Source: Leucoraja ocellata
Taxonomy: Eukaryota
Reading direction: 5' to 3'
Assembly (NCBI GenBank): GCA_036785375.1
Contig: JAWMAR010000710.1
Coordinates: forward strand, 310,001 to 374,000
Length of the DNA stretch: 64,000 nt
In this document: positions 31,818 through 57,005 of the stretch, piece after piece
Position numbering within the stretch: position 1 is the first letter of the stretch
Layout: each line of letters starts with the position of its first letter
Program-made: the position numbers and the translations under genes
The notes under the pieces: generated by a model
What the model was told of the DNA's origin: nothing
What the model saw: only the letters and a program-made list of their open reading frames with translations
Databases searched by the model: none

Positions 31818-31905
31818 ATGAGGCCAAGGTTTCTCTGCGACTGTTTGCCAATTGGTTTGATGTTCGGTTTCTTTGTTTTACTGCTGTGACCTGTTTCCAC
31901 ACAGA
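31818..31905 (+). pseudogene. Leader (signal peptide) exon with premature stop: MRPRFLCDCLPIGLMFGFFVLLL*PVSTQ
   Basis: Hydrophobic leader, phase-1 donor CAGA|GTAAGT at 31906, and clear homology to the - strand leader at 1978-2065, which has CGA where this copy has TGA. Confidence 0.8.
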
Positions 31906-32009
31906 GTAAGTGCTTTCTCTTCACCGGTCACAATCACCTTGCAGTATGTTATCATTGTCCGCGTAAACCCGCAACCCATTGTCAATCTCGCTTTATTCTC
32001 CACGTCCCT

Positions 32010-32420
32010 GAATGTGCTGCTGCCTCACAAATCCACGCCATTCCTTGCTGGAGCTCCATTTCTGAGCCCCTCCCATCAGCCTCTCCTTCTCAAGCACTGA
32101 CACGGTCCTTATCAAAGTCAGAAATGCCTCCTGTGAGATTGTTGCAGAGTTAAACTCTCCCTCCCCATCCCGCTCAGCCTCTGTAGCCTTTGACACGATT
32201 GTCCACACCATCCTCCCCCAACACCTTCCCACCACAGTGCAGGCTGGTGGAACTGCCCTCGACTTATCGATCCAGTCACAGCCCGAGAACCACGCGCAAT
32301 GTCTTCACTTCAATCTCCTGCAAAGTTCCTTCAAAACCGGGTGGAGCTCCTCCACTACCACACCTCAAACCCCTATCCCCACCTCCGGCCCCCTGCCACT
32401 CTCTCCTCTTGTGTGATTAA
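32010..32420 (+). mobile_element. Highly decayed L2-like RT fragment
   Basis: Residual ...AFDTIVHTIL... and T(V)LIKVRN-like motifs. Confidence 0.45.
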
Positions 32421-33142
32421 ATATGCCTGGATCAGGCCAGGAAAATGTGCAGATGCCCCTGTGTATCGTGACCCTTCTTTAGTTGCGAATGGTCATCTGT
32501 CCATTTACTTCCACAGATTCCTGATCCACAAATTCCCTCCAACAGTTTGCTCTTTGCTCGTGTTTCCAGCATCTGCAAACTCTTGGGCCTCCACATCTTC
32601 TCCCTTATCTATTCTACATGGTACATCACAATAATCTCCAATAGATTTGTTTGCCATGATATCGCTTACATAAATTCAAAAAGACATTCTCTTATCGCAT
32701 AAATTATTTTTAAATATCCAAAACTGTTTTGGAACCCGGAAACACCAAACCAGGTTGGAAATTGAAATATTTTCATCCAGCATGTATCAAACAGGAAATT
32801 TAATATGTGGAAAAGATAAAGAGCTGTCATTTAGTCGAGAGAAACACCACTATTTTATTTTTTAATCAGTGGGAAGTAGCAAATATATATTTTTAAATTA
32901 TGCTTTTTTGGTCAAGACATCAACAATGTAATAGTTAGTTACTGTCCTTATAATAAATGATATTTTCAGCACACGTACTCCATGTCTGTCTCAAAGTATT
33001 TTTAAACCAATTACATAAATAGAATTATACGGAATTACATTTAAATATAAAGGGTAAATAGAGAAGTTGGTTTCTGAAGATAACATCAGCGTAAAAGAGG
33101 CAGGATCTGAGTTAGGCTCTGTTTACACTTCAAACTCAGCAA

Positions 33143-33342
33143 NNNNNNNNNNNNNNNNNNNNNNNNNNNNNNNNNNNNNNNNNNNNNNNNNNNNNNNNNN
33201 NNNNNNNNNNNNNNNNNNNNNNNNNNNNNNNNNNNNNNNNNNNNNNNNNNNNNNNNNNNNNNNNNNNNNNNNNNNNNNNNNNNNNNNNNNNNNNNNNNNN
33301 NNNNNNNNNNNNNNNNNNNNNNNNNNNNNNNNNNNNNNNNNN
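33143..33342. other. Assembly gap (200 N)
   Basis: Run of N. The round size suggests the true length is unknown. Confidence 0.99.
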
Positions 33343-33699
33343 ACATTTTATTTGGCAGAATATTAAAGAGTTCTGTGAACAGCTGGGCATCCAGCAGCCA
33401 TTACATTGTGTATACATATTTTGTATATAAAAGGGGACACCACATGGATCGGGGCCGATCTTCTGGGGTAACACTTGGGACTGTGCTGACCATCTGGAGG
33501 TGTCAATTTGTATGAGGCTGAAGTGCTTGGATGCGTAGAGACAAGGATCGGACCCACAGTGTTGGTTAGGTATTGTATAGGAATTTTGTTTGTGATTGAG
33601 AATAAAGAAGTTTAGTTGATCCAGGGGTGAGATTTAGGAGCATAATTGACTAACGTTGCGTTGACTAACGGGGTGAGATTTAGCAGCATAATTACAAAG

Positions 33700-34082
33700 T
33701 AAGCATGCAGGTACAGTAGACAGTGAAGAAAGCAAATGGTATTTTGGCCTTCATAGCAAGATGATTTGAATAGAGGAGAATAGAAATCGTACTGCAGTTG
33801 GACAGGGCCCTGGTGAGACCGCACCTAAAGTATTGTGTGCAGTTTTGGTCTCCTAGTTTGAGAAAGGACATTCTTCTTATCGAGGGTGTGCAGAGTAAGT
33901 TCACCAGATTAATTCCTTAGATGGCGGGACTGACGTATGATGAAAGAATGGATCGACTGGGCATATGTTCACTGAAATTTAGAAGGATGAGAGGGTATCT
34001 TATGGAAACATATAAAGTTGTGAAGGGATTGGACAGGCTAGATGCAGGAAAAATGTTCCCCATGTTCGGGGAGTCCAGAACC
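33700..34082 (+). mobile_element. CR1 3' RT fragment
   Basis: MAGLTYDERMDRLG...ETYKVVKGLDRLDAG. Confidence 0.85.
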
Positions 34083-34195
34083 AGCTTCCCAGCTGATATC
34101 CCAGAGCCGGGGGTTTGTTCCTGTGCAAACACAGAACATCTGTATCTCAGCATCTGTGGAAATCTAATTATTTGTTCCCTGACCCTCTCTTGCAG

Positions 34196-34522
34196 ATTTA
34201 CACAACAAGACGTACACAGTTTATCGCTCAGTCACGGGTCACAGCGAACTCGACCTGATTTGTGAAGCTTCTCCTCAGCTCAGTGAAACCAAATGGACTT
34301 GGAGATCACGTTTCCAGAATAAAGAGAAGTCTACTCTCAGGTCTGAGCCGATCCATGTCAACAGGAGCTACTTTGGGAACCGACTGGAAACCACAGAGGG
34401 AAATGTGAATGACAAGAATCTCCGTGTGAGGATTGTCCCCGTGCAGTTCGAAGATGCTGGAGTTTACACATGTTCCACGGGATCAAATAAATATGTGACC
34501 ATTGAACTAATCACAGTTACAG
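34196..34522 (+). CDS. IgV-set domain exon (D3-like): DLHNKTYTVYRSVTGHSELDLICEASPQLSETKWTWRSR...RVRIVPVQFEDAGVYTCSTGSNKYVTIELITVT
   Basis: Acceptor ctctcttgcag, donor AG|GTAGGA, 327 nt, phase 1-1, open frame. B-strand Cys, C-strand Trp and D-x-G-x-Y-x-C motif are all present. Confidence 0.9.
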
Positions 34523-35334
34523 GTAGGAGACTGGATGTTACTACTTTCAATAATTAAGTTACTGGTGTAGAGTTTCCAATCTGAGTACAGACTGCAATGT
34601 CAGCAGAAATTCCCTAGTTTGAATAATTATTTTATATCCAGAGCTTCCTATTCAACTTATTTGTAATTTGCTGAACTCAAAAGCTGCCTTAAACCAACGT
34701 TATTGGGAAGCACATCAAAATGTTGTTTTCATTTATTTTGCGGAAAACGCATTCTGTTTTATACATAAGAGAGGGAATATGATGAAATGTGATTCACATA
34801 GGTGCAAATGAGCTTCTATCGAAAATATTTTAAAAATTCTTCAACTTCTCTTAACACGTTCCCCAAGTTTCTTTGACCCCAAATGACCCATCCTAATTTT
34901 TGAAGGCTCACTGGAGGCTGAATGTATTTTGCGGAATTGATCAATTAATTTTCACCTGGATGAGTGTTATGGCCAGCAACGTGGCCAGTGGCAATGTTAT
35001 GGCCAGCTCTGTTGCCAGAGACTATGTTGTGGGCAGTGGTTGCTCTTAGTATGATGAATGATCATGGAAAATACACTTGGAGAGGTACATGGATGGGAAA
35101 AGGTGCAGAGGGATATGGGCCAAATGTGGGAAAATATTTTAGATGGAGCATCTTGGACGATTTGGGCTGAATGGACCGAATTGTTTTCATGCTGTATGAC
35201 TCTATGACTCTAACTCTTGTCGTGCAATATAATTTTACACACTTAGATCGTCAGATACTGGTGCCAAAGTACTGGGAATAACACAAGACAATCCAGACAA
35301 AATTCATTGTTTTACGATTTTCTTCTTTCCACAG

Positions 35335-35604
35335 TCACAACTGAACCATCTGGTGCAGTAACTGAGGGAAGAAACATTGCACTGACCTGCTCTGTGTCTC
35401 ATGTCACTGAGCCAATTAGACTGGTTTGGATCAACGATGAAGGCAAAGTTGTAGAGGAGAAAAATCTCATGCAAACAAAGCAGAAGGACAATTTTTTGCA
35501 GCTGATTATTGCAAAAGTTGATGGAGTAAGAAGGAACTGGACATGTGTTTTGTTTCATCAAAGCACAGCCAAGGTTTTCATTCCATATTATCTGCAGTTT
35601 AAAA
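35335..35604 (+). CDS. IgC2-set domain exon (D4-like) with WTC F-strand motif
   Basis: Acceptor ttctttccacag, donor A|GTAAGT, 270 nt, phase 1-1. Sequence VTTEPSGAVTEGRNIALTCSVS...LVWIN...LQLII...NWTCVLF; overlaps ORF 35307-35633. Confidence 0.9.
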
Positions 35605-36625
35605 GTAAGTGTCTTAGTTCCTGCTCTTCGTGATCGCGACACAGAGGTCTTGTCACTTGTTGCTATTCTTTTCGGATAACTTTTAACATTCCATGTCTTA
35701 CTGCAAGTAGAGCTCAATCATAGACATTTCCTTCAAACCTTTTGTCCATGCCTATAAGGTCACTTCTATTATAAGTAGTCCAGATCCCTGAAGCACATGG
35801 GAACACATGGATCACTACTGCTGGCAGACCACTGACCAAGACCTGTGTTGGTGATCTCATTGAAGGTGATCGTGAATTTCATCATCAATGTCTGTCCTTG
35901 TTGATAAGTGTCTCCAAAGGTATGAAAACTAGTCGTAGTATGGAAACCAGTGTGTCACTGTGAACCTTTTTGTCAAAGGTCAGTATAGTATAGTGGGCAC
36001 AGGCCCGTACGAAGCTTTCCAAACAGGGAGGTGGCATGACAGGATTACAAAAAATTTAATGTGAAATAGTGTGTGCACTGCGCAAATCATGAGCGTGAAG
36101 CATGAAGTCCCTCGATGCCCGGGCCCAAGGCTGTAGCTCTGTAGTTTTAGATGCTCTCTGATGCATTCCGAGCCTTATTTTGGAGCATTTTGGCACCAAA
36201 TCTTTGACCAATATTTCAGAAATTAACAGGAATCTGAGAGGTAGCTTTTTCACACAAAGGGTGCTGGGTGTATGTAACGAGCTGCCAGAGGAGGTAGTTA
36301 AGGCTGGGACTATTCTAATGTTTAAGAGTGCACGGATAGGACAGATTTAGATGGATACTAGACTAAGTGCACATGTACTAGACCATGTACACATGGGAGG
36401 GCTGGTCCCCAAATGCAAAATTCCACCTCTCCACCAATTCCAATATTTCTGGAGTGCTGGTATGGGTGTTGTTGGCTGCAGGGACTACAGGTCTCCAGAG
36501 GGCTAGTATGGATATTGTGGGTCAAATGGATTATTGCGGTGGCAGCTCAGTCCCTCAAGCCTGATGTGCTGGCAGCTCACTCACGGCTGGTGGGCTGGCA
36601 GTTGACTCACGGCTATTCCTTGAAA

Positions 36626-36885
36626 TTCCATTTCAAGCAGAGTGCAAAGCCACCAAATTCGAATCCATTTTCCTACCATTTCAAGCAGGGTGCAAGGCCA
36701 CCGAATTCAAATGCAATTTCCAACGACTTCAAGCCGGGTGCAAAGCCACCAAATTCAAGTGCAGTATCATACCACTTCAAGCAGGGTGCAAGGTCACCAA
36801 ATTTAAATGCAGTTTCATACGATTTTATGCAGGGTGCAAGGCCACCACATTCAAATGCAGTTTCATACCATTTCAAGCTGGGTGA
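36626..36885. repeat. 48-bp tandem repeat, ~5.3 copies, inside the Helitron
   Basis: The ttcaagcagggtgcaaggccacc unit recurs at 36632, 36680, 36728, 36776, 36824 and 36872. Confidence 0.92.
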
Positions 36886-37276
36886 AACCATCTTAAAACC
36901 ACCATAAAGCCACACAAAACACCATACTCACAGTTCAATAGACATTTAGTATGTTCAGTTGATTCACAGCTCAGACAGAGTTGTGACCTTTCCCTCCCCC
37001 ATCATGCAGAGACTGAGCAACACCCACACTTCCGGGTTTTATAATCCCTCCCCCTCCCACCGGAAAATATGTGGCCTTCATGGCATGATTGACAGGAGAG
37101 AGATTCTCAACATTTTTTAAACACTAATAACACTTTTAGTTTTCATTGATGGGAAGAATCCTCTGCACCTGATGAGCAGAGGGAGGCTGATTAAGATGGC
37201 CAAAAATCACAGCCGTAAGTGGTAGCATTGTATCTAAAATCTATATAGTGCAAACAGGAAGTTGTCAAGTTTAGCC

Positions 37277-37485
37277 AAACAACAATTTGCAGTGCCTTTT
37301 TACTTCAACCCAACGCCCCCCCCCAAACAACCATTTGCAGTGCCTTTTTACTTCAACCAAACCCCCCCCCCAAACACCCATTTGCAGTGCCTTTTTACTT
37401 CAACCCAAACCCCCCCAAACAACCATTTGCAGTGCCTTTTTACTTCAAACCCCAAACCCCCCAAACAACCATTTGCACTTCAAAC
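37277..37485. repeat. ~47-bp tandem repeat, ~4.5 copies, inside the Helitron
   Basis: aaacaaccatttgcagtgcctttttacttcaac-Cn unit repeated. Confidence 0.9.
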
Positions 37486-40400: not shown

Positions 40401-40983
40401 GGAGTCTTGCCAGGTGTGAGGTGGTGAATGGAAAGGAGAGGGTACAGGGTCCATTCTTTGCAGGCTGTATTTGGTGGCTAGGGGGTACCAGGGTTACGTT
40501 TCTGATTTTCAAACCTGCAGTAAAACTAATTCAGGCAGTTCGTCAGCTGATGATTGTCCAAAGAGTGGGGGGCTTTCCTCTAATAGCTGGTGATTTCTTG
40601 CATGCCCATCCAAACTGAAGAAGAGTCACTAGCTGAGAACTTGCTCCTCAACTTCTCAGAGTGCCTTTCCTTGGCAGCTCCGATTCCTCTTCTCAGCTCT
40701 TCATCGATTAAGCTATCTTTTAACTCTTTAACAATTAGGCTATTGGCTTGATGCATATTTGCCCCCACCCCCACCCACCCCCCCCCCCCCCCCACCCCCC
40801 ACCCCCACCCCCAATATGGAGGAGAAAATATTATAGCTCTAAAATCTACCTTAATTTTGCAATCTCACTAAAGATAATCCCCCATTCCCTCTTCCCTCCA
40901 CATCTCTCTCTCTCCTCCCTACCCCTCTCTCTCTCCCCCTCCCACATCCCCTCATCTTTCTGGCGTGAGAGAGACGAAGATGA

Positions 40984-41728
40984 AGGTGGCGTGGGCCCAA
41001 CTGGGGTGGCGTTGGCCCAGTAGGAGTCAGCTGGGGTGGCGTGGGTCCAGTGGGGGTCAGCGGGGGTGGTGTGGGCCCATTGGGGTTCAGCGGGGGTGGT
41101 GTGGGCCCAGCGGGGGTGGCTTGGGCCCAGTGGGGGGGCATTGGCCCAGTGGGGGTGGCTTGGGCCCAGTGGGGGTGGCTTGGGCCCAGTGGGGGTGGCT
41201 TGGGCCCAGCAGGGGGTGGCTTGGGCCCAGCAGGGGATGGCTTGGGCCCAGCAGGGGGTGGCTTGGACCCAGCAGGGGGTCAGCAGGGGTGGCATGGACC
41301 CATTGGGGGTCAGTGGGGGTGGCGTGGGCCCAACGAGGGTGGTATGGGCCCAGCAGGGGTGGCTTGGGCCCAGTGGGGGTGGCTTGGGTCCAGCACGGGT
41401 GGTGTGGGCCCAGCGGGGGTGGCTTGGGCCCAACGGAGGTGGCTTGGGACCAGCGAGTGTGGGTTGGGCCCAGCAAGGGTGGCTTGTGCCCAGCGGGGGT
41501 GGCGTGGGCCCAGCGGTGGTGGCGTGGGCCCTGCGGGGGTCAGCAGGGGTGGCATGGACCCATTGGGGGGTCAGTGAGTGTGGCGTGGGCCCAACGGGGG
41601 TGGTATGGGCCCAGCGGGGGGTGGCTTGGACCCAGAGGGGGTGGCCTGGGCCCAGCAGGGGTGGTGTGGGCCCTGCGAGGGTGGCTTGGGCCCAGTGGGG
41701 GTGGTTTGGGCCCAGCGGGGGTGGCGTG
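40984..41728. repeat. Same ~20-bp minisatellite, expanded array
   Basis: About twice the length of the copy-1 array, at the equivalent position of composite copy 2. Confidence 0.92.
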
Positions 41729-42194
41729 GTGTTGGGGTTACAGCCCAAGGGGAGCGGGCCCTGCCACAGCAGCGCTGGTGTTAGGGTTACAGCCGCTGGG
41801 TTCAGATTCAGCCACTCCCGCCCGGCGAGGGAAGGACGGTCTCTCCCTTATCCAGGGCCAGAAATTTTTTTTTTTTTTCTCTTCCCCCTTGGGATTTTTT
41901 CTTACTCTGTGGGGAAAAAAGGGGGGTGCGGTCACACCCAACGCACCCCTCCTTCGGATGGCCATGGGGCAGCTTGGTGGAAGATCTTTGCCATGACACC
42001 CAAACTGTGGACCTTAAAGGTCTCAAAAGTAGTGAAAAATCACCTTAAAAATAGTTGTACAAGTTTCTTTCACCTGTTTTGTGCCGTAAAACATTACAGT
42101 GCTTGTAGCATCCACAATAACTTCACCAAAGGCTGCCATGCGAGAACAGAAGACGTGAGGGAGGGAATACTGATGTCTTCACCTTGTCTGACCA

Positions 42195-46342: not shown

Positions 46343-46466
46343 CAAGTTAAACTCAAGACTTCTGATCAAAATTAGTCAGTGTGGTTAATGCCTGGTCATT
46401 GGAGGAGCTATTGAATGATGTCCATTTATTCTACAAATGTGAACTCTGTGTTTATTATTTTGACAG

Positions 46467-46574
46467 AGAATTACACCATTATATTCACCATTGTTGTAAT
46501 TATCGGGAGTCTGGCTGTTCTCCTCGTCATTATACTGGCAGTGGTGTTCTGTCAAAGAAAACGCAAGCCTACAG
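46467..46574 (+). CDS. Transmembrane exon: KNYTIIFTIVVIIGSLAVLLVIILAVVFCQRKRKPT
   Basis: Acceptor ttttgacag, donor AG|GTAAAG, 108 nt, phase 1-1. About 24 hydrophobic residues followed by Cys and a basic stop-transfer stretch. Confidence 0.9.
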
Positions 46575-47475: not shown

Positions 47476-47574
47476 GTTTAGGCAATCAAAGTCAGAAAGC
47501 TCCACGATCAAAAAGAAAAACAGAAGGCGAATCTCACCTTTATGGCAACCCTGATGAAATTCAGCAGATGGCAG
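47476..47574 (+). CDS. Cytoplasmic exon 1: GLGNQSQKAPRSKRKTEGESHLYGNPDEIQQMA (YxN motif)
   Basis: Acceptor ctttctgaacag, donor CAG|GTAATG, 99 nt, phase 1-1, open frame. Confidence 0.8.
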
Positions 47575-48595
47575 GTAATGTGAAAACAAGAAACATAAGA
47601 GAAAATTCATAATATCTGTGTCAATTTTCTCATTCCTATTCTTTTTGCCATTAGTAATTTAAAAGTACATTTAAAATGTAGAAGAATTGTGATTTTATTT
47701 TGTTACAAACAAATCCCCTGCATAGTCCTTCTTTACAATTGTTGGTCTTATAAATGAGGAACATTCCTAAACTGAGAGCATGGGATGGTCTGATCACACA
47801 CGACCCTAAGATCACAATTGTGCCATCAAACGCTTACCCACCAAGACAGAACTCGGGGTAACGTGCCTGTCCCAGAGGTTGGTATCCGACATCCAGATTA
47901 CATTATATGTCATGTGAAGCTGGCTGAGCTTTAATTGAAGTGGCTCCTGAGAACAGTGCAGCAAAATGCAGGGAGAAACATTAGCCAATGTGTGTGGCTT
48001 TTCTCACCATTGATTCTGCCAAATGAAGGAAATTGTAGGGAACCCATCTCAAATTTAGCAGCTTTACAAAATTTGTCTCAATTTTCCATCTGCAGCATAA
48101 AAGCAGACGTCATAAATAGTAAGATTAAACGAGAACTTACCAGTTTGAAGTTTGATCTGTATTTTATGAGGAGTTACGATGAGGGATTACGTGAAGAAGC
48201 CCGCTAGGACGCATGCGTGTCATTCTTCAAAGCAGCGGTGTGAATTCACAGATAACTGTAATGACTAAACATAGTAAGATTAGAGAAGAGGTACCAGTTA
48301 AGTATATGATCAGGGTGGTAGCGGAGGGCACGTAATCCCTCATCGTAACTCCTCATAAAATACAGATCAAACTTCAAACTGGTAAGTTCTTGTTTAATCT
48401 TACTATTTTACTTCGGAGTCACGTGAGTGACTACGTGAAGATTTCAAAGCTCTGTGATTTCATGCCGTGGAAAAGAGTCCATGCACACGTCTGCCTTGAC
48501 TGTGGGAGGAATAGTGTAACATAATTGCACATGATTCGTTATTGAAATCATAAAATTTATTAACACAAATTATAACCCCATTTATGGGTTTTTAA

Positions 48596-49210
48596 TTAAT
48601 TTACAGAATTTAAATTTTTTTCTGCAAATGTTCCAGTTTTCCTCACTGGCTTATTATAAAATAACTGGAAAGTTCTTTCCCATGTCCATCCTGCTGCTTC
48701 AAGGACTTGGTCCATGGGCACATCCAGTTGTACTGCTGCCGATGTAGCTGCAGCCCTGGTGGAATGAGATTTGAACACGTTAGTATCCACCCCAGCCTGC
48801 GTCAGTACCTGTTTCAGCCATCTCGAGATCGTCTGGATCGTCACTTTTTTGTGAGGTTTTTTATGGCTGATCAGCAGTCCCTTCTCATTGCCTCTTAGGA
48901 TTTTTGTTTTCTCCATGTATAGTGATAGATGTTTAACTATATAGAGGCCGTCATCTGCAGGGTATGACCTAAATTGGATATTGAGGCCTGCTGATCCCTG
49001 TCTGTTCTGTTTTACTAGTTCGTAAATATGGAACGTAATATCGTCAGGTGAGGAGGTCATGTTGTCCAGTCTGAGTTTGTGCAGTGACTGAACCCTCTGT
49101 GCCATGACCAATGCCATTAACATGACTGTTTTAACGTTAGTCTGTGTAGGGACAGGGTAGATGCTGGTGACCAGTTCCTGAGTGCTTTCAGGACAATGCT
49201 TACATCCCAT
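48596..49210 (-). pseudogene. DIRS tyrosine recombinase C-terminal catalytic part
   Basis: AQRVQSL (catalytic R), HSTR, AGW and catalytic Y; frameshifted upstream. Confidence 0.85.
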
Positions 49211-49565
49211 ATATGGGAGTACCTGGTTTTTGGGGGGTTTGTGTTAAATATTCCCCTCATGAGCTTGGTTACCAGAGGGTGAGTCTCTACCGTGTAACGC
49301 TCTGTCCCTTGCCATAGGTATGTCGACAGGGCACTTCTGGCGCTGTTGATGGCACTGTAGCTGAACCCCTCATCATAGTGGAGGCCTGCCAGATATTCCA
49401 GAACAGATGGGATGTTGATATTTCTGTTGGTGATTTTGTTCTTATGACAGTATGTTTCCCACTTTCTGATGTAGACCAGATATTGTTTCTTGGTTGATTC
49501 TCTTTGGGCCGCCGAGATGATGTTTGCTGTTCGGTCCGTGAGTCCCAGTTGTAAAAGCGGTGTCT

Positions 49566-51274
49566 TTAAACTCTACAAATTAACAGGTTCAAGCTTTTAT
49601 GGCTTGGATGGCTATCCCCCGTCACGGGATGTAGTAGTAGATCTGGTCTGTGTGGGATTGTAATACATAGTTCTAATACCATGTTTTGCACCATGGGAAC
49701 CATGGTTGAGTAGGCCAATCGGGTACTACTAAAATACCAGACGCAGAGTCTTGTTGTATTTTCCTTAATACCCGACTGATGAGGCAGAAGGGAGGGAATG
49801 CGTAAATAAACCATTTCCCCCAATGCAACAAAAATGCATCTGTTGCCGCTGCCCCAGGGTCTGGTTCCCATGAAACATAGTTAGATATCTGGTTGTTTAG
49901 TCTGGATGCGAAAAGATCGATATTTGTAATATCAGAAAACATCGTTTTGTTTAACATCCATTCGGTGTTTTCATTAAATTTGCGTGACCTGGTGTCTGCC
50001 ACTAAATTTAGTCTCCCTGGTAGGTAAGTGGCTGATATCCAAATATATTTCTGGATGCACCATTGCCAAATTGAATTAGCGAGATTGTCACATGATATTG
50101 ATTTGTTGCCGCCCATGTGGTTGATGTATGCTACCACAGTGGTATTGTCTATTTGTAATCTAACATGCTGGTGGTGTGATCCAGTACAATATGACTTAAG
50201 GCCATGAAATGCACCCAACATTTCCAAGTAATTTATACCCAGTGTGAGTAAGAAGGATGCCTCCTGCGCTGTCCATCTACCTCCACAGCTGGTGATGGTA
50301 TTGGTGGCTCCCCACCCTAGTGCACTGGCATCAGTTTGTAGTACCATCGAAGGGTTACTGACAATGATTGGGTTGGAACAAAGCCAGATGTTATCTATCC
50401 ACCATTTTAGTTCCGTTTTGGCTTGGATTGGTAGTCTCATAGGTCTGTCAAAGTGACCTGCATTAATTTTTAGAGCTTAAATTTTGGCTCTCTGTAAGTT
50501 TTGGTAATGTAGAGGTCCAAATTGTATGGCTTGGAAAGCAGCCACCATTTTACCAATTACTTTAGCTACCAATCTGATGGATGGGTTTCTGATGTTAATG
50601 AGGTTACTGCATATCTCTATTATTTCTCTGGCCTTTTCCTTAGGTAGTGTCACTGTCATGTGAACTGAATCAAAGGTGAATCCCAAGCAGTCCATAGTAG
50701 TGGATGGTGTTAGTTTAGATTTAACTGGATGGATGATAAATCCCAGTTGTTCAAACAACTGTTTTGTGGCTGTTACAGTTAGTATGGCCAATTCCAAAGT
50801 TATGCCCACAATGAGTATGTCATCTAAATATGCCATAATCATGTGTTTGCGTTTCCGTAGAAATGCTAGGGCTGGTTTCAAGATTTTTGTGAACAGCCTG
50901 GGGGCTGATGTTAGCCCATTTGGCAGTGCTTTATATTGTCAGATTGTCCCATCCCGTTGAATTTTAACATCTGTGGTCACCTCGTATGGGTACTGAATAG
51001 TAAGCATCTTTTAAATCGATGCTAACCATGAAGTACCCTTTGAAATTAGTTGTTTAGCAGTAACAAAGGTTTCCATTTTAAAGTGAATATATTGTGCAAA
51101 TGTATTCAATTTTGTCAGACCTATGATGATGCGACAACCACCATCTTTTTTGGTTTTGGTAAATATATTGGACACGAATTCTAATGGTTCATGTCGCGTT
51201 AGCTCAATTACACCTTTTATGTAAAGCCGCTCCAGTTCAGCTTGTGCTTCTGTTTTTTCCTTATCAGAGAGCAC
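49566..51274 (-). pseudogene. DIRS pol: RT / RNase H / methyltransferase-like, fragmented by stops and frameshifts
   Basis: ORF pieces 51011-51274, 50477-50881, 49673-50440 and 49566-49871. Confidence 0.85.
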
Positions 51275-51467
51275 AAACTTTTGGTTTGGTTTATGTTGAA
51301 CTGGAGGGCTGTATAAACTCTATGGTATATCCCTGGATACTGCTTAAGATGTAAGTATTGGTGGTTAGCATGCTCCATGCATTCAAAAACCAGTATAGTC
51401 TTCCCCCAACCTCCCATATTATTTGGGGAACCAGACCCACCTACCTCCATTGCTACCAGTGGCAGGA

Positions 51468-52442
51468 CTACTTCTTCCTGAAGTTCTTCCGTTGCTGTTG
51501 TGCTGGTGCTTGGTTTTTCGGGTTGGTTGCTGGTGTTGTTGGGGTTCCCCGCATTTTCCAGGAAGGCCGGCCTGGGCCATGACCTAAAAAAGACTCATGT
51601 TTGGAGTGCCGTGCCCTCGAGCTCTCACCAGTGCTGCTGGTGGGTGCGTAAGGGTGCAGTCGTAGGCTGTGGTGGGTTTTTGCAGGGTGGGTTGTTCCTT
51701 TTATTAACCCCAAAGTTTTTGCTTCTTCGTCTAGCTCCTTTACCTGCTTCGACAAGTTGCCTCCGAACAGGAGAATGGATGGTTTGGTAGCTCCAGGTTT
51801 ACACAGTCCCGCGAATTTAGGATTAAGTGTCGGCTTTATGGCACTTTTTCTTATGCAGTTTAATTGGTGCTGCGTATTGCAGAACAGTGCCAGCGCGTCC
51901 TGTTGATCTTGGGACATAACCCTGTCGTCCACAGTGCGGGCAATTGCCGTTATTCCTGCAGTCAGCAATTTTAGGACTTTTTGAAGTTTCACGTCCATAC
52001 TTCTGACCCCTGGTCCGATATGTTTCCAGATGCAGCTGTTAATAATTGGGACGTTTAGGGAAATGCAGTTGTCTGGTGCCATATGTCTTCCTGTCGTATC
52101 CACTACAGCCTGTTCTTGTAGCTGGTTCAGTGACATATAGTCAATGCTGACAGCAAGCTTTGGCTCCAGATTTGCCCCATTTTGTTCTGGCTGTATGAAA
52201 TTTGCCACCATATCCAGCAAGTTTTCTTTGTCTTGCACCCCATGCACACTTGTATGTTTTTCCGCGGACCCCTCTTCCAAGTCAGCCCAGAACTGACTTG
52301 AAGTGCTCCCCTCTGATAAGGTGGAGACACTATGCAGCCCTTGGAAAGGTACTGCTGTGGGTTTGATATAGGGCCCACAGTGGCCTGACTCCAAATCCCG
52401 GAGCCGGTCACGCTGGAGCAGATGCTCCAAACACCGTTCCAT
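51468..52442 (-). CDS. DIRS gag-like ORF1
   Basis: 324-aa open frame at the element 5' end, upstream of RT. Confidence 0.7.
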   Translation of the reverse strand: MERCLEHLLQRDRLRDLESGHCGPYIKPTAVPFQGLHSVSTLSEGSTSSQFWADLEEGSAEKHTSVHGVQDKENLLDMVANFIQPEQNGANLEPKLAVSIDYMSLNQLQEQAVVDTTGRHMAPDNCISLNVPIINSCIWKHIGPGVRSMDVKLQKVLKLLTAGITAIARTVDDRVMSQDQQDALALFCNTQHQLNCIRKSAIKPTLNPKFAGLCKPGATKPSILLFGGNLSKQVKELDEEAKTLGLIKGTTHPAKTHHSLRLHPYAPTSSTGESSRARHSKHESFLGHGPGRPSWKMRGTPTTPATNPKNQAPAQQQRKNFRKK

Positions 52443-54174
52443 ACGGGTCCAGCGCTCTCAGTCGCTGGCCTCCCGTGGTGTATCAGAGTCGGACTCCTCC
52501 GAGTCCACGACTCTGTTTGTTTTGTGTTTTGCCTTGCCGTTCAGCCGCGTTGATTTGGCCGGCGCGACGAATACACAGGGCACAGCTGATCCCACTACGG
52601 GTGATCTTAGTGCCGACGGCTGCTTTTGCTGGCTGTCCGCTGCTCCGCGGTCCTCCCTGACCAGATTCGTCACAGCCCTCGTTGTCTTTTTCACTTTCTA
52701 CATTCTCCGTCTGTAGTGGGCAAAAAGGCAAAAGACCGCAGAGTAAGAACCTTACCTGCAATAGCGGCTTTTTTAATTGCCGCCGCGGGGGAACGTCCTT
52801 CCACCGCGTCTGACATTTTGCAATGCGTGTAGCGCAATGACACGCATGCGTCCTAGCGGGCTTCTTCACGTAGTCACTCACGTGACTCCGAGGTAAAATC
52901 CAAGCAATGGGTCCACTACAGACTCTATCAGAGTGCAGATTGAGATCAAGTAATGTTGTGTCCACTCTAACCCTATTCTCATTATTTCTCAGTGCAACGT
53001 TACACCTCACCTCCAACAGGCTTGTCTGTTCATCTACAGGAGCAATGCTCCTCTTTAACCGTCAGCACCTCTCCAGAGGAGCTGCAGTCAATGCAACCTC
53101 AGTTGTATAGCTGTGGTGCATGGAAGCAAGTTTTTACATGATTACTTGTGCCCTGAGGTCACTATGGACTCTTTCGCTGAGACATCAGCAAATCCCAGAA
53201 TCACAGAATGGTTACAGTAAAGAATGGGGCAATCTGGCTAATTGAGTCATAACCAGCTCTAAGAGCAATTAAATGTCACTTCCCCATCCTCGCCCAAGAG
53301 CCCTAAAATGATCTAGTTTCAGATACAAATTCAAGAATTAGCCTTCCCATGAGGAATGGAAGTCCAAGGTCCTCCTTGTACAACACAACCTTCTGACAAT
53401 AACATTTATGAAGAGGGCTTGGAATCTTTAGGGGATGGGCACATTGGCTGATGTTAAGGTCCCAACACAGATACTTTACTCTGAGCTATATCCTCTCCGG
53501 AGATTTTCAAGACAACAGAGAGATGTGGAATATGGAACAGTACAACACAGGAACAGGCCCTTTGGCCCACAATATCTGTATATTGGCCTGGCCATGCTCA
53601 ATGCTGATGCTCCAACTACCCGTCTGCTCCCTGGGTCCTACCACTACACTCAGCCAGCCTTCCTGTCAGTGCTGCCCCTCAGGCCCTCTCTCTGAAATGC
53701 CAGATAATAGTACCCACAGGATCACAAACTTTTTACTGAAGATCTTCAATGAACAATAGCCAGGACTAAGCCTACTATGGTTAGGACGTGTCACATTTGC
53801 CCAGGTAAAACCTGTTGAAGTTCATTCATTCTGAGCTATTGGAATTCTAGACTGGGAAATGTGCCGGCACTTTCACAATGAAGTTGACATTCATTGGTTT
53901 ATTATTGTCTCCTGCACTTAAGATAAAGTGAAAACTTTGCCTTGTGTACCATCCTAATATGGTCGTAATTTAGGAAACACTGTTTCTATGAACTCTGATT
54001 TTATACACATGGTCTTATCCCACCATTAAATGTCTCTGACACATCTGAAACCATGTTCCTGGTCATTCTGGTGTATCTGATTATTAATGGGTTACTGTTT
54101 AAACACTGGATTGCAGCTTCTTTAAAATCAAGCCGGATTAAAGTCTTAATCAGAAAATAATACTTATTTTCCAG

Positions 54175-54252
54175 AAATTAATGAGACCCCAGTACCTGAG
54201 ATGAGCCGTGTTGCTGAATATATGTCTGTGAGTAGGAAGACAAAGCAAGAAG
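54175..54252 (+). CDS. Cytoplasmic exon 2: EINETPVPEMSRVAEYMSVSRKTKQE (ITIM/ITSM-like AEYMSV)
   Basis: Acceptor ttattttccag, donor AAG|GTAAAT, 78 nt, phase 1-1. Confidence 0.8.
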
Positions 54253-54769
54253 GTAAATAGATGACTCAGTCAATGAATCTCTAGTTGTAGAGGTCTTGTA
54301 TTTGATGAAGCAACCTATTTCACATTTCACAGTTTTCTAACAAGAATGTGAGGAAGGAAATCGCAAGCACACAAACTAATTGATCAATGCAACAGTCTCT
54401 CTTGTGTCAATTCACCCCTTAGCCCCAAACTTCCTCATCCAACTGCAGGTCTTACTCTGCAATGGTTAATTGACTAATTTTCACTGGACTATCATGGTAA
54501 ACCCATGAATGTTGAGACATCACCATGAACAACATATTCACACTCCTAATTTATGTTGATCCTGATTTTATTATTTTATTTGATTAACAGCTTGGTTAGC
54601 AGCTCTGTAAAGAATGGACAACACTTACCCTTTCAAAATTCACCATCCCTTTCACAAAATATCATCTGGCATTAAATGCCTCCAATTCACTTTGCCAGTA
54701 GTTCAGACTTTGTTCAAAAGTGAAAATAACATCAACATTTCAGCTTGGTTTGAGCATCATTAATAGATG

Positions 54770-54935
54770 GTGGATAGGTGATGTTTCGGATCGAGACCCT
54801 TCTTTTGAGTCTGAAGAAGGGTCACGACCCGAAACATCACCTATACATGTCCTCCAGAGATGCTGCCTGACCTGCAGATGTACTCTAGCACTTTGTGTCC
54901 CTTTGTGTATTAACCAGCATCTGCAGTTCTTTGTT
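54770..54935 (+). mobile_element. Penelope-derived end with inverted duplication and minimal hammerhead-like core (54811-54838)
   Basis: CTGAAGA-A-GGGTC-AC-GACCC-GAAAC-ATC, preceded by its own imperfect reverse complement. Family members lie at ~1255-1440, 6170-6300, 18710-18910, 25135-25335, 26870-27034, 38120-38300, 44590-45190, 58515-58730 and 59995-60080. Confidence 0.6.
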
Positions 54936-55996
54936 TCTACGTTAGACAGCATTGTTTTTGCCAGAATTTAGACCACATTTCTGATGAATCAGGTGAACAA
55001 CAGAGTAATCTTTCTTGAAAAATCTGAAGGAACCTTTCAATAAATCAGCCATTGCTCATGTTTTAATGAGAAAAATATAAATTGGTTACCTTGTTCCACA
55101 GTATGGACCAATTGTATTCCACTGCAAAGGGTTTGGTTGTATTCATATATTGTCTTTCTACTGATGCAACAAAAGCTTTTCACAGAACCTCGGCACACAT
55201 GACAATAAACTAAACTGAACCTCAGCTGATCATATCTCCCCAAATTCCTTGAACTTAGTCCACATATGACTGGTCTCGAAGTATTCAAGAAGGAACTGCC
55301 AATTGAAAATCGAAACAAACAAAAGTGCTGGAGAAACTCAGCTGGTGCGGCAGCATTTAATTGCTCTCTAATTTGTGTTTTGCAGTCTTTTTTTCCGCTA
55401 ACCAGTGGTCTTTGTAATTTATGCTTCATTTAGGTGTTGTGCCTCTGATGCTGCTGCAGGCAAAATTATCATTGTTCCTATGCCTCGCCATTGTTGTGTA
55501 TCTGTCAATAAATTTAACGACTTAATTTGACTAACTCCTAAAATGTACTGAATGATTTGGCTCCAGCAAAATCTGTGGTAGAGAATTTCACAGTTTATTT
55601 TTTCTCATCATCTTAATCCTTATTGTCTCATGTCTTAAACCTTTACCCCTGGTCATGGTCTCCCCCAACAGGGAACATCTTTCCTCCATCAAGACTGGTC
55701 TACCTGTTGGAATTTTCTATGTTTCCATGAGAACCATTGTCATTCTTCTAAACTTCACAATCCAAATTAACACAAATTCTCTTCATAATTTCCACCATCC
55801 CAGGAAGATCAAAACAAGGAGGTTAAGAGATGTGACTTTTCATGGAGGGTTTTTTTCAAACTGCTGGAAGTACTCTATGGGTCGAGCAGCATCTATGGAG
55901 GGAAAGCGATGGTCAGCGTTTCGTATCATGACCCTGCATTGACTTCATCCTTTTTCAAATACAAATAAATTATTTGTTTCCAACTTATTTCCACAG

Positions 55997-56053
55997 ATGC
56001 AGAGGAAGATATTCATTATGGATCCATCTCCTTCCAGCCAAAAGCATCTGGTG
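55997..56053 (+). CDS. Cytoplasmic exon 3: DAEEDIHYGSISFQPKASG (ITIM IHYGSI)
   Basis: Acceptor tatttccacag; donor at 56054 (GTAAAA) or an in-phase alternative at 56051. Acidic residues followed by IxYxxI are typical of ITIM exons. Confidence 0.82.
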
Positions 56054-56775
56054 GTAAAATAGCTTTATTTAAATATGTTTTAATCTTTTGTCACAGTGAG
56101 GACTATTGGCACTGAGTAGTCTGATACCCTGCTGTCTTTGGCCACCTTACAACAGCGTTGGGCATTCCTGGGATAAAACCCCTCACTCTGCCCATCGACA
56201 TGAAGCGGGACAGTCAGCTGAGGCTCAGTTAGGAGCCCAATCTTCTCTGGGTGGGTTCAGCCTCCCCAGCCTTCTCCAAATGTGTTCGGGTCCCCTAAAC
56301 TACAGTGGGTGTGTTCTGGTCCCCTAACCTACTCTAAGTTGGTTCTGGTCCCCTAGCCTACTCTGAATAGGTACAATAGCCACTCCAGAGATCCAACCAG
56401 TGACATCCAGGCTGCTGTTACAGCACTGTTATGCATTGTCGTTGGTGATCAGAAGTGAAACCGAGACACCATTTATGCATTCTGAAGAACAATCTTCTGC
56501 ACAACTCCTGACTAAGCTAGAAGTGATAAGCACAATCCTCCTCGAATTACAAAGATGTCTTGTTCATGCTGACCATTCCTGCAGCTCACTGTAAATGCAG
56601 AGGTATGAGCATACAGATGGCAGATGGGTTTTCTGGAATTCAATGGCTTATTGATCTATTGTCAGGAAGAGCAAAATATAGTAAGCTTTAGACTTTTATA
56701 TTCCATTTGTCGTTTCCTTTGTCAACATAATCCACCAGTGTCATATTTTAATTGTGATGTTTGCATTTATTACAG

Positions 56776-56804
56776 GCAGCAGCGATAATCAAGCATCAGA
56801 CACT
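56776..56804 (+). CDS. Cytoplasmic mini-exon 4: GSSDNQASDT
   Basis: Acceptor tttattacag, donor |GTAAGT. The 29-nt length converts phase 1 to phase 0, exactly as the last exon requires. Confidence 0.75.
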
Positions 56805-56936
56805 GTAAGTATATTGATTCTTGTTGATGAAATCCCAGATCGTACACGTATATATTAAATTTGTAATCTGTTTACTGATCTAAACAGCGACAACAGCAAA
56901 TGTCTTAAATACAATTGGCATTTCTTTCTCTTTCAG

Positions 56937-57005
56937 AACCTTGTTGCTTCAAAGGAAGATGAGGCATCTGTCATCTATGCTCAAGTAACAAACACAAAAA
57001 CATGA
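56937..57005 (+). CDS. Terminal coding exon: NLVASKEDEASVIYAQVTNTKT* (ITIM VIYAQV)
   Basis: Strong acceptor tttctttctctttcag, phase 0, C-terminal VxYxxV, stop TGA 57003-57005. Confidence 0.85.
   Translation, partial: NLVASKEDEASVIYAQVTNTKT

What the first reader, a model, noticed from the sequence alone, without database searches (positions are those of the whole stretch)
31818..57005. Hidden CD4/LAG-3-like Ig receptor with a multi-ITIM inhibitory tail
Seen: manual splicing gives leader + IgV (DAGVYTC) + IgC2 (LTC...W...WTC) + TM + ~118-aa tail with four tyrosines: HLYGNP, AEYMSV, IHYGSI, VIYAQV. Known: Trp replacing Tyr in the F-strand WxC of membrane-proximal C2 domains, in a V-C2 tandem, is a hallmark of CD4/LAG-3 D2/D4. 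CD4 signals through a CxC Lck-binding motif, absent here. I/VxYxxI/V is the SHP-recruiting ITIM consensus and YxN is the Grb2 SH2 consensus. Inference: this is neither canonical CD4 nor canonical LAG-3, but possibly an uncharacterised cartilaginous-fish family of inhibitory receptors built on a CD4/LAG-3-type ectodomain.
Basis: partly seen in the sequence, partly recalled or inferred. Interest (0 to 1): 0.9.

Follow-up and report, generated by a model that had tools for sequence, protein, structure and literature searches.

The report
Skate ITIM receptor, CD4/LAG-3-like family
This is a real skate gene copy for an immune-type surface receptor with an inhibitory tail, one of a large unnamed fish family whose outer part most resembles CD4 and LAG-3, but this copy looks incomplete and carries a stop codon in its signal peptide.

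Summary
Each of the eight exons from the V exon to the stop is 95-100% identical, in the same order and with matching junction codons, to Leucoraja erinacea RefSeq 'uncharacterized protein LOC129701493' (P0179). Three corrections follow.

- The leader has an in-frame TGA (31887-31889) where a paralog in the window and all four homolog leaders compared have Arg or Gln.
- The 'V-C2' pair is D3-D4 of a four-domain unit. The D1-D2 exons of the ortholog are not in the assembled DNA, and the N gap (33143-33342) lies in that intron.
- Only two motifs (IHYGSI, VIYAQV) are canonical ITIMs. HLYGNP is YxN and AEYMSV is ITIM-like.

The family is large and unnamed. It occurs in sharks, rays and chimaera, and also in sturgeon, bichir, coelacanth and teleosts. 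It has ITIM-tailed and lysine-TM short-tailed members.

A four-domain AF2 model of a shark member has LAG-3 and CD4 as its best Foldseek and VIA matches. A family profile aligns the D4 WxC to the WxC of LAG-3 D2 and D4. Unbiased searches give ties with nectin, CAR and CEA. No RNA support was found.

First readers of this scan flagged the same family at eight other places in this genome (unchecked).

The parts
31818..31905 (+). Leader (signal-peptide) exon, 88 nt, phase 1, donor GTAAGT. It has an in-frame TGA at 31887-31889 (MRPRFLCDCLPIGLMFGFFVLLL*PVSTQ).
   Evidence: Sequence. It is 83% identical over 241 bp to an inverted paralog that reads CGA (Arg) at that codon. Homolog leaders read ...FLLRPVSTQ or ...FLLQPVSTQ (P0089; P0141, P0162 and P0200).
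33143..33342 (.). Assembly gap (200 N) inside the intron between the leader and V exons. The D1 and D2 exons seen in the ortholog could lie here. It was not filled and not looked up.
   Evidence: N run. (depth 0 in the bin 33174-33307 in X1, X2 and X4; no spanning piece listed). (no D1 or D2 match on the + strand).
34196..34522 (+). V-set Ig exon, which is domain D3 of the family unit (LDLIC...WTW...DAGVYTC), phase 1-1.
   Evidence: Pfam V-set 4.1e-7. 96.3% identical to P0179 residues 192-299.
35335..35604 (+). C2-type Ig exon, which is domain D4 (ALTC...LVW...NWTC, the WxC motif), phase 1-1.
   Evidence: Pfam Ig_3 1.2e-5. 97.8% identical to P0179 residues 301-389. AF2 model of seven strands, pLDDT 83.
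46467..46574 (+). Transmembrane exon (uncharged TM IIFTIVVIIGSLAVLLVIILAVVF, then CQRKRKPT), phase 1-1.
   Evidence: 97.1% identical to P0179 residues 391-425.
47476..47574 (+). Cytoplasmic exon with HLYGNP (YxN, Grb2-SH2-type consensus), phase 1-1.
   Evidence: 100% identical to P0179 residues 427-458.
54175..54252 (+). Cytoplasmic exon with AEYMSV (ITIM-like, Ala at -2), phase 1-1.
   Evidence: 100% identical to P0179 residues 460-484.
55997..56053 (+). Cytoplasmic exon with IHYGSI (canonical ITIM), phase 1-1.
   Evidence: 100% identical to P0179 residues 486-503. The donor after 56053 is fixed by the ortholog's ...KASGGSS....
56776..56804 (+). 29-nt micro-exon (GSSDNQASDT) that shifts phase 1 to phase 0. 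Skipping it would end the protein at EPCCFKGR* without the last ITIM.
   Evidence: acceptor ttattacag, donor gtaagt. 100% identical to P0179 residues 505-513.
56937..57005 (+). Last coding exon with VIYAQV (canonical ITIM) and the TGA stop at 57003-57005.
   Evidence: 95.5% identical to P0179 residues 514-535.
48596..52442 (-). DIRS-like retroelement (tyrosine recombinase and reverse transcriptase ORFs) inside the intron between the HLYGNP and AEYMSV exons. It is not part of the gene product.
   Evidence: ORFs. Pfam Phage_integrase 9.9e-9 and RVT_1 9.8e-7.

Best explanation
The window holds a copy of a skate gene orthologous to Leucoraja erinacea LOC129701493.

What the gene is. It belongs to a large, unnamed multigene family of type I membrane receptors of cartilaginous and non-tetrapod bony fishes. 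The family's ectodomain unit has four Ig-like domains:
- D1, V-like without the disulfide
- D2, C1/I-like with YxC
- D3, V
- D4, C2 with WxC

Visible in the window are a leader exon, D3, D4, an uncharged TM and five small cytoplasmic exons. These exons carry YxN (HLYGNP), an ITIM-like AEYMSV, and two canonical ITIMs (IHYGSI and VIYAQV) whose tyrosines lie 35 residues apart.

Inferred mechanism. The ectodomain binds an unknown ligand. Src-family kinases phosphorylate the two ITIM tyrosines, and the tandem SH2 domains of SHP-1/SHP-2 dock there and damp signalling from activating receptors. The YxN site could recruit Grb2. Family members with a lysine in the TM and short tails would be the activating partners, acting through an adaptor. 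Because all upstream exons are phase 1-1 and the 29-nt exon shifts the frame, exon skipping could give soluble forms or forms without the last ITIM.

Shown: exon anatomy, orthology, family membership, motif content, and the best structural matches (LAG-3 and CD4).

Inferred: ITIM function, pairing with activating forms, and the isoform logic.

This particular copy, as assembled, has a nonsense codon in the signal peptide and no visible D1-D2 exons. It may be a null allele, a decaying copy, or partly unassembled.
For: Exon anatomy and phases.

Orthology: the 8 of 8 exon peptides from the V exon onward match P0179 at 95.5-100% in the same order, and the junction residues match.

Family:
- 80 hits at E<=1e-3 with the V exon alone. 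The top ones are 'uncharacterized' proteins of Scyliorhinus, Mobula, Narcine, Heptranchias, Pristiophorus, Chiloscyllium, Pristis and Callorhinchus.
- Bony-fish members.
- 144 hits with the family profile.
- Domain map D1-D2-D3-D4.

Tail classes: of the 154 family proteins among 209 fetched, 61 have a TM plus at least one ITIM (43 have two). 27 have the Lys-TM motif; the Lys-TM members that one search printed have ITIM-free tails.

CD4/LAG-3 likeness:
- AF2 model of P0087: pLDDT 83.4, pTM 0.81, continuous strands across D1-D2 and D3-D4.
- Foldseek ranks 1 and 2 are LAG-3 (7.9e-18 and 8.4e-18). Ranks 3, 4, 7 and 8 are CD4.
- VIA ranks 1-4 are four-domain CD4 (Z 15.5-17.6). Rat CD4 D3D4 fits at rmsd 2.5 A over 169 of 177 residues.
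- The profile hits LAG-3 at 2.2e-12 with WxC in register.
- The Atlas ranks g6f-like, CD4 and LAG-3 among the nearest named clusters of the sturgeon member.
Against: - No RNA support. In one oligo-dT RNA run of the sister species (about 5% of it read) the V exon had depth 0, the C2 exon at most about one read, and there were no joints.
- The leader has TGA.
- No D1 or D2 exon is present in the window.
- The neighbouring paralog's D1 exon lies in three frames, so the cluster contains decaying copies.
- Homology with the paralog starts only 64 nt upstream of the ATG, next to a GC-rich satellite.
- CD4/LAG-3 kinship is not exclusive. CEA (4.9e-15) and NCAM1 (1.3e-12) outrank LAG-3 in the profile search. 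PD-L1's hit (29.8 bits whole-sequence, one listed stretch) is of the same order as LAG-3's best single stretch, 26.8 bits.
- VIA-wide gives ties with nectin, MPZ, JAML and CAR.
- The single C2 model is unspecific in Foldseek.
- No Pfam C2-set or CD4 family hit at E<=0.1 in 7 of 7 members.
- The Atlas on the shark member is unspecific.
- SHP recruitment is inference only.
Confidence: 0.72

Rival explanations
1. The copy in this window is a pseudogene or null allele. It would be a decaying member of the cluster that has lost a working signal peptide, and perhaps D1-D2 and its promoter, so it makes no receptor even though the downstream exons are still open.
For: - In-frame TGA in the leader where the paralog has CGA and homologs have Arg or Gln.
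- No D1 or D2 exons on the + strand.
- The RefSeq model of the sister-species ortholog also lacks a leader. It starts inside D1.
- The adjacent paralog has a D1 exon split over three frames.
- Satellite and TE sequence abuts the leader.
- No RNA reads lie on the V exon.
- Three of the four differences in the C2 exon between the window and organism B change the protein (positions, decoded by hand).
Against: - All eight exons from the V exon onward keep open frames, AG/GT borders and 95-100% identity to the ortholog.
- The TGA could not be checked in independent reads. No variant row at 31887 was shown, but 28 rows were hidden and no listed piece spans it.
- D1-D2 may simply sit in the unread gap.
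- High non-synonymous change is also typical of live immune receptors.
Confidence: 0.4
2. The family is not specially related to CD4/LAG-3. It would be a CEACAM-like, or generic V-C2 adhesion-type (nectin, CAR, B7), IgSF family, and the WxC and the rod-like model would be convergent.
For: - CEA is the first PDB profile hit (4.9e-15) and CEACAM1 also scores.
- D1 lacks the disulfide, like a CEACAM N domain (alignment).
- NCBI auto-names include CEACAM5-like, CEACAM1-like, CD276 homolog, VCAM1-like and obscurin-like.
- VIA-wide ties nectin-1, MPZ, JAML, nectin-3 and CAR with CD4.
- D2 has YxC or no Cys, never WxC, and matches Pfam C1-set and Ig light-chain constant domains.
- A frame-shifting small cytoplasmic exon recalls the CEACAM1 long and short tails (recalled knowledge, not tested).
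Against: - The CEA score is summed over five weak stretches. Its best single stretch has i-E 7.2e-5, against 1.7e-5 for LAG-3.
- In Foldseek the CEA model ranks 48 at 4.1e-12, against LAG-3 at 7.9e-18.
- Two-domain fits to nectin, CAR, NTB-A and CD48 have rmsd 3.8-6.5 A, against 2.5 A for rat CD4 D3D4.
Confidence: 0.25
3. The exons are the second half of a longer eight-domain gene, with two D1-D4 units. The leader at 31818 would then be a relic of a former separate gene that is now skipped.
For: - Eight-domain and longer members are common (P0003, P0131, P0134, P0141 and the many 850-1030-aa proteins).
- Rhinoraja P0148 has a D4 in front of the unit that is 80% identical to the window's exons.
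- A relic leader would explain the tolerated TGA.
Against: No D1-D4 exons of an upstream unit lie on the + strand in the 31.8 kb before the leader. The only other family exons, a leader and a D1, are on the minus strand at 2074-786 and point away.
Confidence: 0.12

Closest known systems
Leucoraja erinacea LOC129701493, RefSeq 'uncharacterized protein' (P0179, 535 aa)
   Same: Ortholog in a sister species. D3, D4, TM and all five tail exons are 95.5-100% identical, in the same order and with the same junction residues. Variants of run X4 at 35484 and 35568 reproduce its residues.
   Different: P0179 has part of D1 and all of D2 in front of D3 and no leader. The window shows a leader (with TGA) but no D1 or D2. 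It is a computed model with no name, function or paper (one search found none).
CD4 / LAG-3 family
   Same: - Four Ig-like domains arranged as two rigid V-C rods with a continuous strand across each V-C junction in the AF2 model.
- Best Foldseek and VIA matches.
- WxC in strand F of the membrane-proximal C2 domain, aligned in register with LAG-3 D2 and D4. Takizawa et al. 2023 call WxC the motif most supportive of the family's V-C2 duplication (passages read).
   Different: - D2 has no WxC (0 of 186) and looks C1/I-like.
- D1, not D3, lacks the disulfide.
- The tail has no Cx(C/H) and no (F/Y)xxL(D/E). Instead it has YxN plus canonical ITIMs.
- It is a multigene family with activating-type partners.
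- No Pfam C2-set or CD4 hit.
- Synteny was not tested.
G6F-like (G6fL) of teleosts and mammalian G6F (LY6G6F)
   Same: Hughes et al. 2012 (PMC3528668, passages read) describe G6fL as having four extracellular Ig-like domains, one TM and a tail with a conserved YxN Grb2 site. The window's tail starts with HLYGNP, and YxN recurs in shark, pike, bream, sturgeon and bichir members. The two nearest named Atlas clusters of the sturgeon member are 'g6f-like' (0.97), and LY6G6F scores 0.95.
   Different: G6fL signals through an ITAM split over two exons and is a thrombocyte collagen receptor. This gene has ITIMs and no ITAM (0 of 12 bony-fish members scanned had an ITAM-like pattern). No G6f-named protein came back in two searches, so direct sequence kinship is untested. 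The statement that G6F-like resembles CD4/LAG-3 (Ohashi et al. 2010) is recalled. That paper is not held.
Paired inhibitory/activating IgSF receptor families (KIR, LILR, SIRP, CEACAM, fish NITR and LITR)
   Same: It works like them on paper. Closely related ectodomains come either with an uncharged TM and a tail of two ITIMs, or with a lysine in the TM and a short tail. The genes sit in TE-rich clusters with pseudogenes.
   Different: The domain types and order differ. No adaptor partner or ligand is known, and nothing has been tested at the bench. The comparison with these families rests on general knowledge, not on a call.

Membership tests
Unnamed fish four-Ig-domain receptor family (LOC129701493-type) | D3 (V) and D4 (C2, WxC) domains matching the family profiles, followed by a TM and a YxN/ITIM tail in the same exon order. 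| tested here: met
   V exon: 80 hits, best 1.4e-110. The exons align as D3 and D4. 8 of 8 exons are 95.5-100% identical to P0179.
Unnamed fish four-Ig-domain receptor family (LOC129701493-type) | Complete unit of leader, D1, D2, D3 and D4. | tested here: inconclusive
   The leader is present but carries TGA. There is no D1 or D2 on the + strand. The N gap lies in that intron and was not looked up.
CD4/LAG-3 | V-C2-V-C2 ectodomain of four Ig-like domains forming two rigid rods. | tested here: inconclusive
   Met for a family member in a predicted model. The window copy shows only D3-D4. D2 is C1/I-like rather than a short C2. It is a prediction, not a solved structure.
CD4/LAG-3 | WxC in strand F of both D2 and D4 (Takizawa 2023). 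| tested here: not met
   D4: NWTC in the window and W in 188 of 205 family D4 domains. D2: W in 0 of 186, Y in 123, no Cys in 50.
CD4/LAG-3 | Tail motif Cx(C/H) (CD4) or (F/Y)xxL(D/E) (LAG-3). | tested here: not met
   The tail exon peptides printed contain neither motif. The only Cys is the juxtamembrane one in CQRKRK.
CD4/LAG-3 | Genomic linkage to the CD4/LAG-3 region. | not tested
The scan's notes hold no COPS7A, USP5 or LAG3 word for this genome.
G6F / G6F-like | Four Ig-like domains, a single TM and a conserved cytoplasmic YxN. | tested here: met
   Family architecture. HLYGNP in the window. YxN in other members.
G6F / G6F-like | ITAM split over two exons (G6fL). | tested here: not met
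   No YxxL/I-x6-9-YxxL/I/V pattern in 12 of 12 bony-fish members scanned. By eye there is none in the window's tail either (peptides), which has ITIMs instead.
G6F / G6F-like | Direct sequence homology to a G6F or G6fL protein. | tested here: inconclusive
   Only a language-model neighbour list is available (g6f-like 0.97, LY6G6F 0.95). No G6f-named hit appeared, which were limited to 8000 word-sharing candidates. No G6fL sequence was on hand.
ITIM-bearing inhibitory receptors (functional class) | Type I membrane protein with an uncharged TM and at least one (S/I/V/L)xYxx(I/V/L) in the tail. | tested here: met
   IHYGSI and VIYAQV. The TM has no K, R, D or E. AEYMSV and HLYGNP do not fit the consensus.
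ITIM-bearing inhibitory receptors (functional class) | Tyrosine phosphorylation and SHP-1/SHP-2 (or SHIP) recruitment. | not testable with these tools
   Needs phosphopeptide pull-down or a cell assay.
CEACAM | N-terminal V domain without disulfide followed by A/B-type C2 domains, with specific sequence kinship. | tested here: inconclusive
   Family D1 lacks the Cys pair. CEA is the first profile hit but only by summed weak stretches. It ranks 48 in Foldseek. The window lacks D1.

The most novel reading that the evidence does not exclude
These genes are a third, previously undescribed lineage of the CD4/LAG-3/G6F group. In cartilaginous fishes it expanded into a large, fast-evolving cluster of paired inhibitory (YxN plus two ITIMs) and activating (lysine-TM) receptors, including doubled eight-domain forms. 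This would be the chondrichthyan counterpart of KIR, LILR or NITR, built on the scaffold that elsewhere gave the MHC class II co-receptors. MHC-type or other polymorphic ligands would therefore be a testable guess.
Probability: 0.3. Interest if true: 0.8.

Novelty: new variant of a known kind. Interest (0 to 1): 0.55.

Why it matters
If the family really shares ancestry with CD4, LAG-3 and G6F, it shows what else the V-C2-V-C2 scaffold became in early jawed vertebrates. It would be a multigene system of opposing inhibitory and activating receptors that tetrapods appear to have lost, since no tetrapod protein appeared in the lists.

That would bear on the origin of the MHC class II co-receptors. 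It would also bear on which receptors sharks and rays use for innate-type self/non-self tuning, a question for which few candidates exist.

The family is large, conserved from chimaera to teleosts, and has no name or paper that I could find.

The single copy in this window is of lesser weight. It may be defective, and its sister-species ortholog is already in RefSeq as an unnamed model.

Tried and rejected
- Paralogous Ig exons inside the window. tblastn of the V, C2 and TM peptides against the window found none (the C2 query there was in the wrong frame). Later tblastn with ten and then three homologs found only a leader and a D1 remnant on the minus strand at 2074-786.
- Single-exon searches against solved structures. 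The V exon gave weak FGFR, JAML and PD-L1 hits. The C2 exon gave titin (summed over six domains) and LAG-3 D2 at only E 0.28-0.73. One search repeated only to see the alignment.
- Foldseek with the window's C2 model alone was unspecific, with no hit at E<=1e-3. VIA-wide on it gave CD160 at Z 9.5 and rat CD4 D4 at Z 9.1 among many ties.
- The Atlas on shark member P0087 gave only generic Ig clusters.
- RNA evidence. The one reads call gave no exon coverage worth the name and no joints. It also neither confirmed nor contradicted the TGA.
- Alternative acceptors for the last exon were rejected. They give phase 2 or a stop (worked by hand). The 29-nt exon solved the phase problem.
- Selenocysteine or read-through at the TGA was considered and dropped, because homologs have Arg or Gln there.
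- Literature. Eight searches (and the finds) returned no paper on this family or on six of its LOC numbers. Ohashi et al. 2010 is not held. Its content is recalled, and only its title was seen in reference lists.
Those of Takizawa et al. 2023 may list shark CD4/LAG-3-family sequences that bear on the kinship claim.
Exon peptides were used one by one. Natural homologs (P0087 and the family alignments) stood in for the multi-domain questions.

Full report
**What is in the sequence.**

On the + strand between 31818 and 57005 lies a chain of small exons with AG/GT borders.

| Exon | Coordinates | Content | Source |
|---|---|---|---|
| V-set | 34196-34522 | LDLIC...WTW...DAGVYTC |; Pfam V-set 4.1e-7, |
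| C2-type | 35335-35604 | ALTC...LVW...NWTC | |
| Transmembrane | 46467-46574 | uncharged TM | |
| Tail 1 | 47476-47574 | HLYGNP | |
| Tail 2 | 54175-54252 | AEYMSV | |
| Tail 3 | 55997-56053 | IHYGSI | |
| Tail 4 | 56776-56804 | 29-nt micro-exon | |
| Tail 5 | 56937-57005 | VIYAQV, stop | |

All exons up to 56053 are phase 1-1. The last exon needs phase 0. Only the 29-nt exon (good acceptor, GTAAGT donor) reconciles the two. Without it the frame ends EPCCFKGR* before VIYAQV.

**The gap, tested first.**

The 200 N at 33143-33342 lie inside the intron between the leader exon (ends 31905) and the V exon (starts 34196). No reading frame crosses them, so the question is what they hide.

None of the listed contigs of runs X1, X2 or X4 spans the gap.

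**The leader.**

ATG 31818 to the donor after 31905 is 88 nt and phase 1, as expected for an IgSF leader. However, codon 24 is TGA, at 31887-31889.

An inverted paralog of this exon lies at about 2074-1978 on the minus strand. It is 83% identical over 241 bp. It reads CGA (Arg) there and gives an intact MKPRFICRSLPIGLMFGYFVFLLRPVSTQ.

Homolog leaders read LLRPVST in Pristis P0089, L. erinacea P0141 and Rhinoraja P0162, and LLQPVST in L. erinacea P0200. So the window's leader carries a nonsense change of the CpG-to-TpG type.

The reads call neither confirmed nor contradicted it. No row for 31887 was shown, 28 rows were hidden, and no listed piece covers the place.

**Orthology.**

The V exon alone, searched against 1.84 billion representatives, gave 80 hits at E<=1e-3. 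The top hits are 'uncharacterized' proteins of eight chondrichthyan genera.

A family profile then returned L. erinacea LOC129701493 (P0179, 535 aa). Exon by exon, its identities to the window are:

| Exon | Identity to P0179 |
|---|---|
| V | 96.3% |
| C2 | 97.8% |
| TM | 97.1% |
| HLYGNP exon | 100% |
| AEYMSV exon | 100% |
| IHYGSI exon | 100% |
| micro-exon | 100% |
| last exon | 95.5% |

The order is the same. The single residues between these blocks equal the split codons I predicted (V, K, E, D, G), except Ala for Gly at the TM/tail junction.

Two variants of run X4 (35484 A>G, 35568 G>C) reproduce P0179's Glu and Pro. Organism B is therefore most likely L. erinacea, and the window comes from a sister species about 1-2% diverged. 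Run X1's listed contigs match the window without a difference.

So a RefSeq model in the sister species joins exactly these exons. This supports the splicing by conservation, not by RNA of this species.

**What is missing.**

P0179 has 190 residues in front of the V exon: part of a first domain and a whole second domain. The window has no match to them on the + strand.

An HMM domain map of the fetched proteins shows a family unit D1-D2-D3-D4. The window's V and C2 exons are D3 and D4. The D1-D2 exons are either in the unread stretch or lost.

**The family.**

It occurs in sharks, rays, skates and chimaera. It also occurs in sturgeon, paddlefish, bichir, reedfish, coelacanth, eels, pike, salmonids and cyprinids. 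Nearly all records are 'uncharacterized'. A few carry automatic names: CEACAM-like, CD276 homolog, VCAM1-like, obscurin-like.

Many proteins carry two or more D1-D4 units.

Of the 154 family proteins among 209 fetched:
- 61 have a TM and at least one canonical ITIM in the tail (43 have two, 11 have three).
- 27 have a conserved lysine-bearing TM (the GYLLVKL type). The Lys-TM members that one search printed have short tails with no ITIM.
- 30 lack a TM or are truncated.

This is the pattern of paired inhibitory and activating receptors.

In the window's own tail, IHYGSI and VIYAQV fit the ITIM consensus. AEYMSV has Ala at -2. HLYGNP is YxN.

**Relation to CD4 and LAG-3.**

Evidence for:
- An AF2 model of the four-domain bamboo-shark member P0087 (29-sequence alignment, pLDDT 83.4, pTM 0.81) has long continuous strands across the D1-D2 and D3-D4 junctions.
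- In Foldseek against 350,542 PDB chains, ranks 1 and 2 are LAG-3 (7.9e-18 and 8.4e-18). Ranks 3, 4, 7 and 8 are CD4 (3.0e-16 to 4.7e-15). These lie ahead of pIgR (2e-14), Dscam (1.6e-13) and the CEA model (4.1e-12).
- VIA-align on Foldseek's top 1000 puts four-domain CD4 at ranks 1-4 (Z 17.6, 17.0, 15.6, 15.5), with the next at 14.2. Rat CD4 D3D4 fits D3-D4 at rmsd 2.5 A over 169 of 177 residues. TCR V-C chains fit at about 13 A.
- A 29-sequence profile hits full-length LAG-3 at 2.2e-12, third of 177,635 sequences. There are two stretches, in which the D4 WxC aligns with WGC of LAG-3 D2 and WQC of D4.
- Takizawa et al. 2023 name WxC as the motif most supportive of the family's origin. They also warn against over-reading it in a lamprey protein (passages).

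Evidence against, or tempering:
- CEA (4.9e-15, summed weak stretches) and NCAM1 outrank LAG-3. PD-L1's hit (29.8 bits whole-sequence, one listed stretch) is of the same order as LAG-3's best single stretch of 26.8 bits.
- The search that does not lean on Foldseek ties nectin-1, MPZ, JAML, nectin-3, CAR and rat CD4 D3D4 at Z 13.3-14.5, although CD4 has the lowest two-domain rmsd.
- The window's C2 model alone is unspecific.
- D2 never has WxC (0 of 186) and matches C1-set and light-chain constant domains.
- No Pfam C2-set or CD4 family scores at E<=0.1 in 7 of 7 members.
- The tail has neither the CD4 nor the LAG-3 motif.

I put the kinship at roughly even odds.

**G6F-like.**

A first-reader note on a neighbouring window used the word 'G6F-like'. 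Hughes et al. 2012 describe teleost G6fL as having four Ig-like domains, one TM, a conserved YxN and an ITAM split over two exons. It is a thrombocyte collagen receptor (passages).

The sturgeon member's nearest named Atlas clusters are 'g6f-like' (0.97, ranks 1-2), then CD4 and LAG-3 (0.96) and LY6G6F (0.95). The membrane-proximal YxN is shared. The ITAM is not.

Two database searches returned no G6f-named protein, so this remains a lead. Ohashi et al. 2010, which as I recall reported similarity of G6F-like to CD4/LAG-3, is not held.

**Expression.**

One oligo-dT RNA run of organism B, with about 5% of it read, laid 180 reads on 31700-35700. Nearly all fell on a high-copy repeat at 33576-34111. 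The V exon had depth 0 and the C2 exon at most about one read. No joint was seen. This neither supports nor excludes expression.

**Context.**

The window is rich in transposons:
- a LINE ORF at 2964-6047
- a DIRS-like element in the intron at 48596-52442
- GC-rich 20-bp satellites at 31299-31503 and 41088-41729

The minus-strand paralog's D1 exon lies in three frames. Eight other first-reader notes place similar genes 33.5 kb before the window and 253-337 kb beyond it, and on other pieces of this genome (unchecked). This suggests a large cluster with live and dead copies.

**Verdict.**

This is a real copy of an unnamed ITIM receptor gene of a widespread fish family whose ectodomain is best matched by LAG-3 and CD4, and perhaps by G6F-like. 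This copy is incomplete as assembled and has a stop in its leader. The family, rather than this locus, is the interesting thing.

Noticed in passing
window 786-2074, minus strand: A second, divergently oriented family gene starts here. It has an intact leader exon (about 2074-1978, MKPRFICRSLPIGLMFGYFVFLLRPVSTQ, donor GTAAGT) and a D1 exon remnant (about 1182-798). The tblastn pieces of that remnant lie in three different frames, so it has at least two frameshifts. The rest of the gene would lie before the window's start.
   Followed up: partly
window 48596-52442, minus strand: A DIRS-like retroelement sits in the intron between the HLYGNP and AEYMSV exons. It has ORFs with Phage_integrase (tyrosine recombinase, 9.9e-9) and RVT_1 (9.8e-7) domains, plus two ORFs without a Pfam hit.
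   Followed up: partly
window 2964-6047, + strand: An intact-looking 1027-aa LINE ORF with an endonuclease domain (Exo_endo_phos, 5.3e-12) and a reverse transcriptase domain (RVT_1, 9e-31).
   Followed up: partly
window 31189-31503 and 41003-41729: GC-rich tandem arrays of a 20-bp unit (CAGCGGGGGTGGC.TGGGCC). They lie about 10 kb apart in direct orientation and bracket the leader, V and C2 exons. The first array ends about 300 nt before the leader's ATG.
   Followed up: partly
window 33576-34111: A very high-copy repeat just upstream of the V exon. Its word depth reaches about 1e6 in three DNA-type runs, and it took nearly all RNA reads laid in the one reads call.
   Followed up: no
window 62639-62817: A second assembly gap (179 N) lies outside the finding.
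   Followed up: no
database proteins P0001, P0003, P0011 (not in the window): Some family members carry the D1-D4 unit two to five times in one predicted protein: 15 domains in Scyliorhinus canicula XP_038652085, and a 2139-aa protein in Anguilla. These may be real giant receptors or fused gene models.
   Followed up: no
skate family D2 domains (P0179, P0148, P0141, P0177): In these skate proteins the second Cys of D2 is replaced by Trp (LYTWEV instead of LYTCEV). D2 therefore lacks its disulfide. 50 of 186 family D2 domains have no F-strand Cys.
   Followed up: partly
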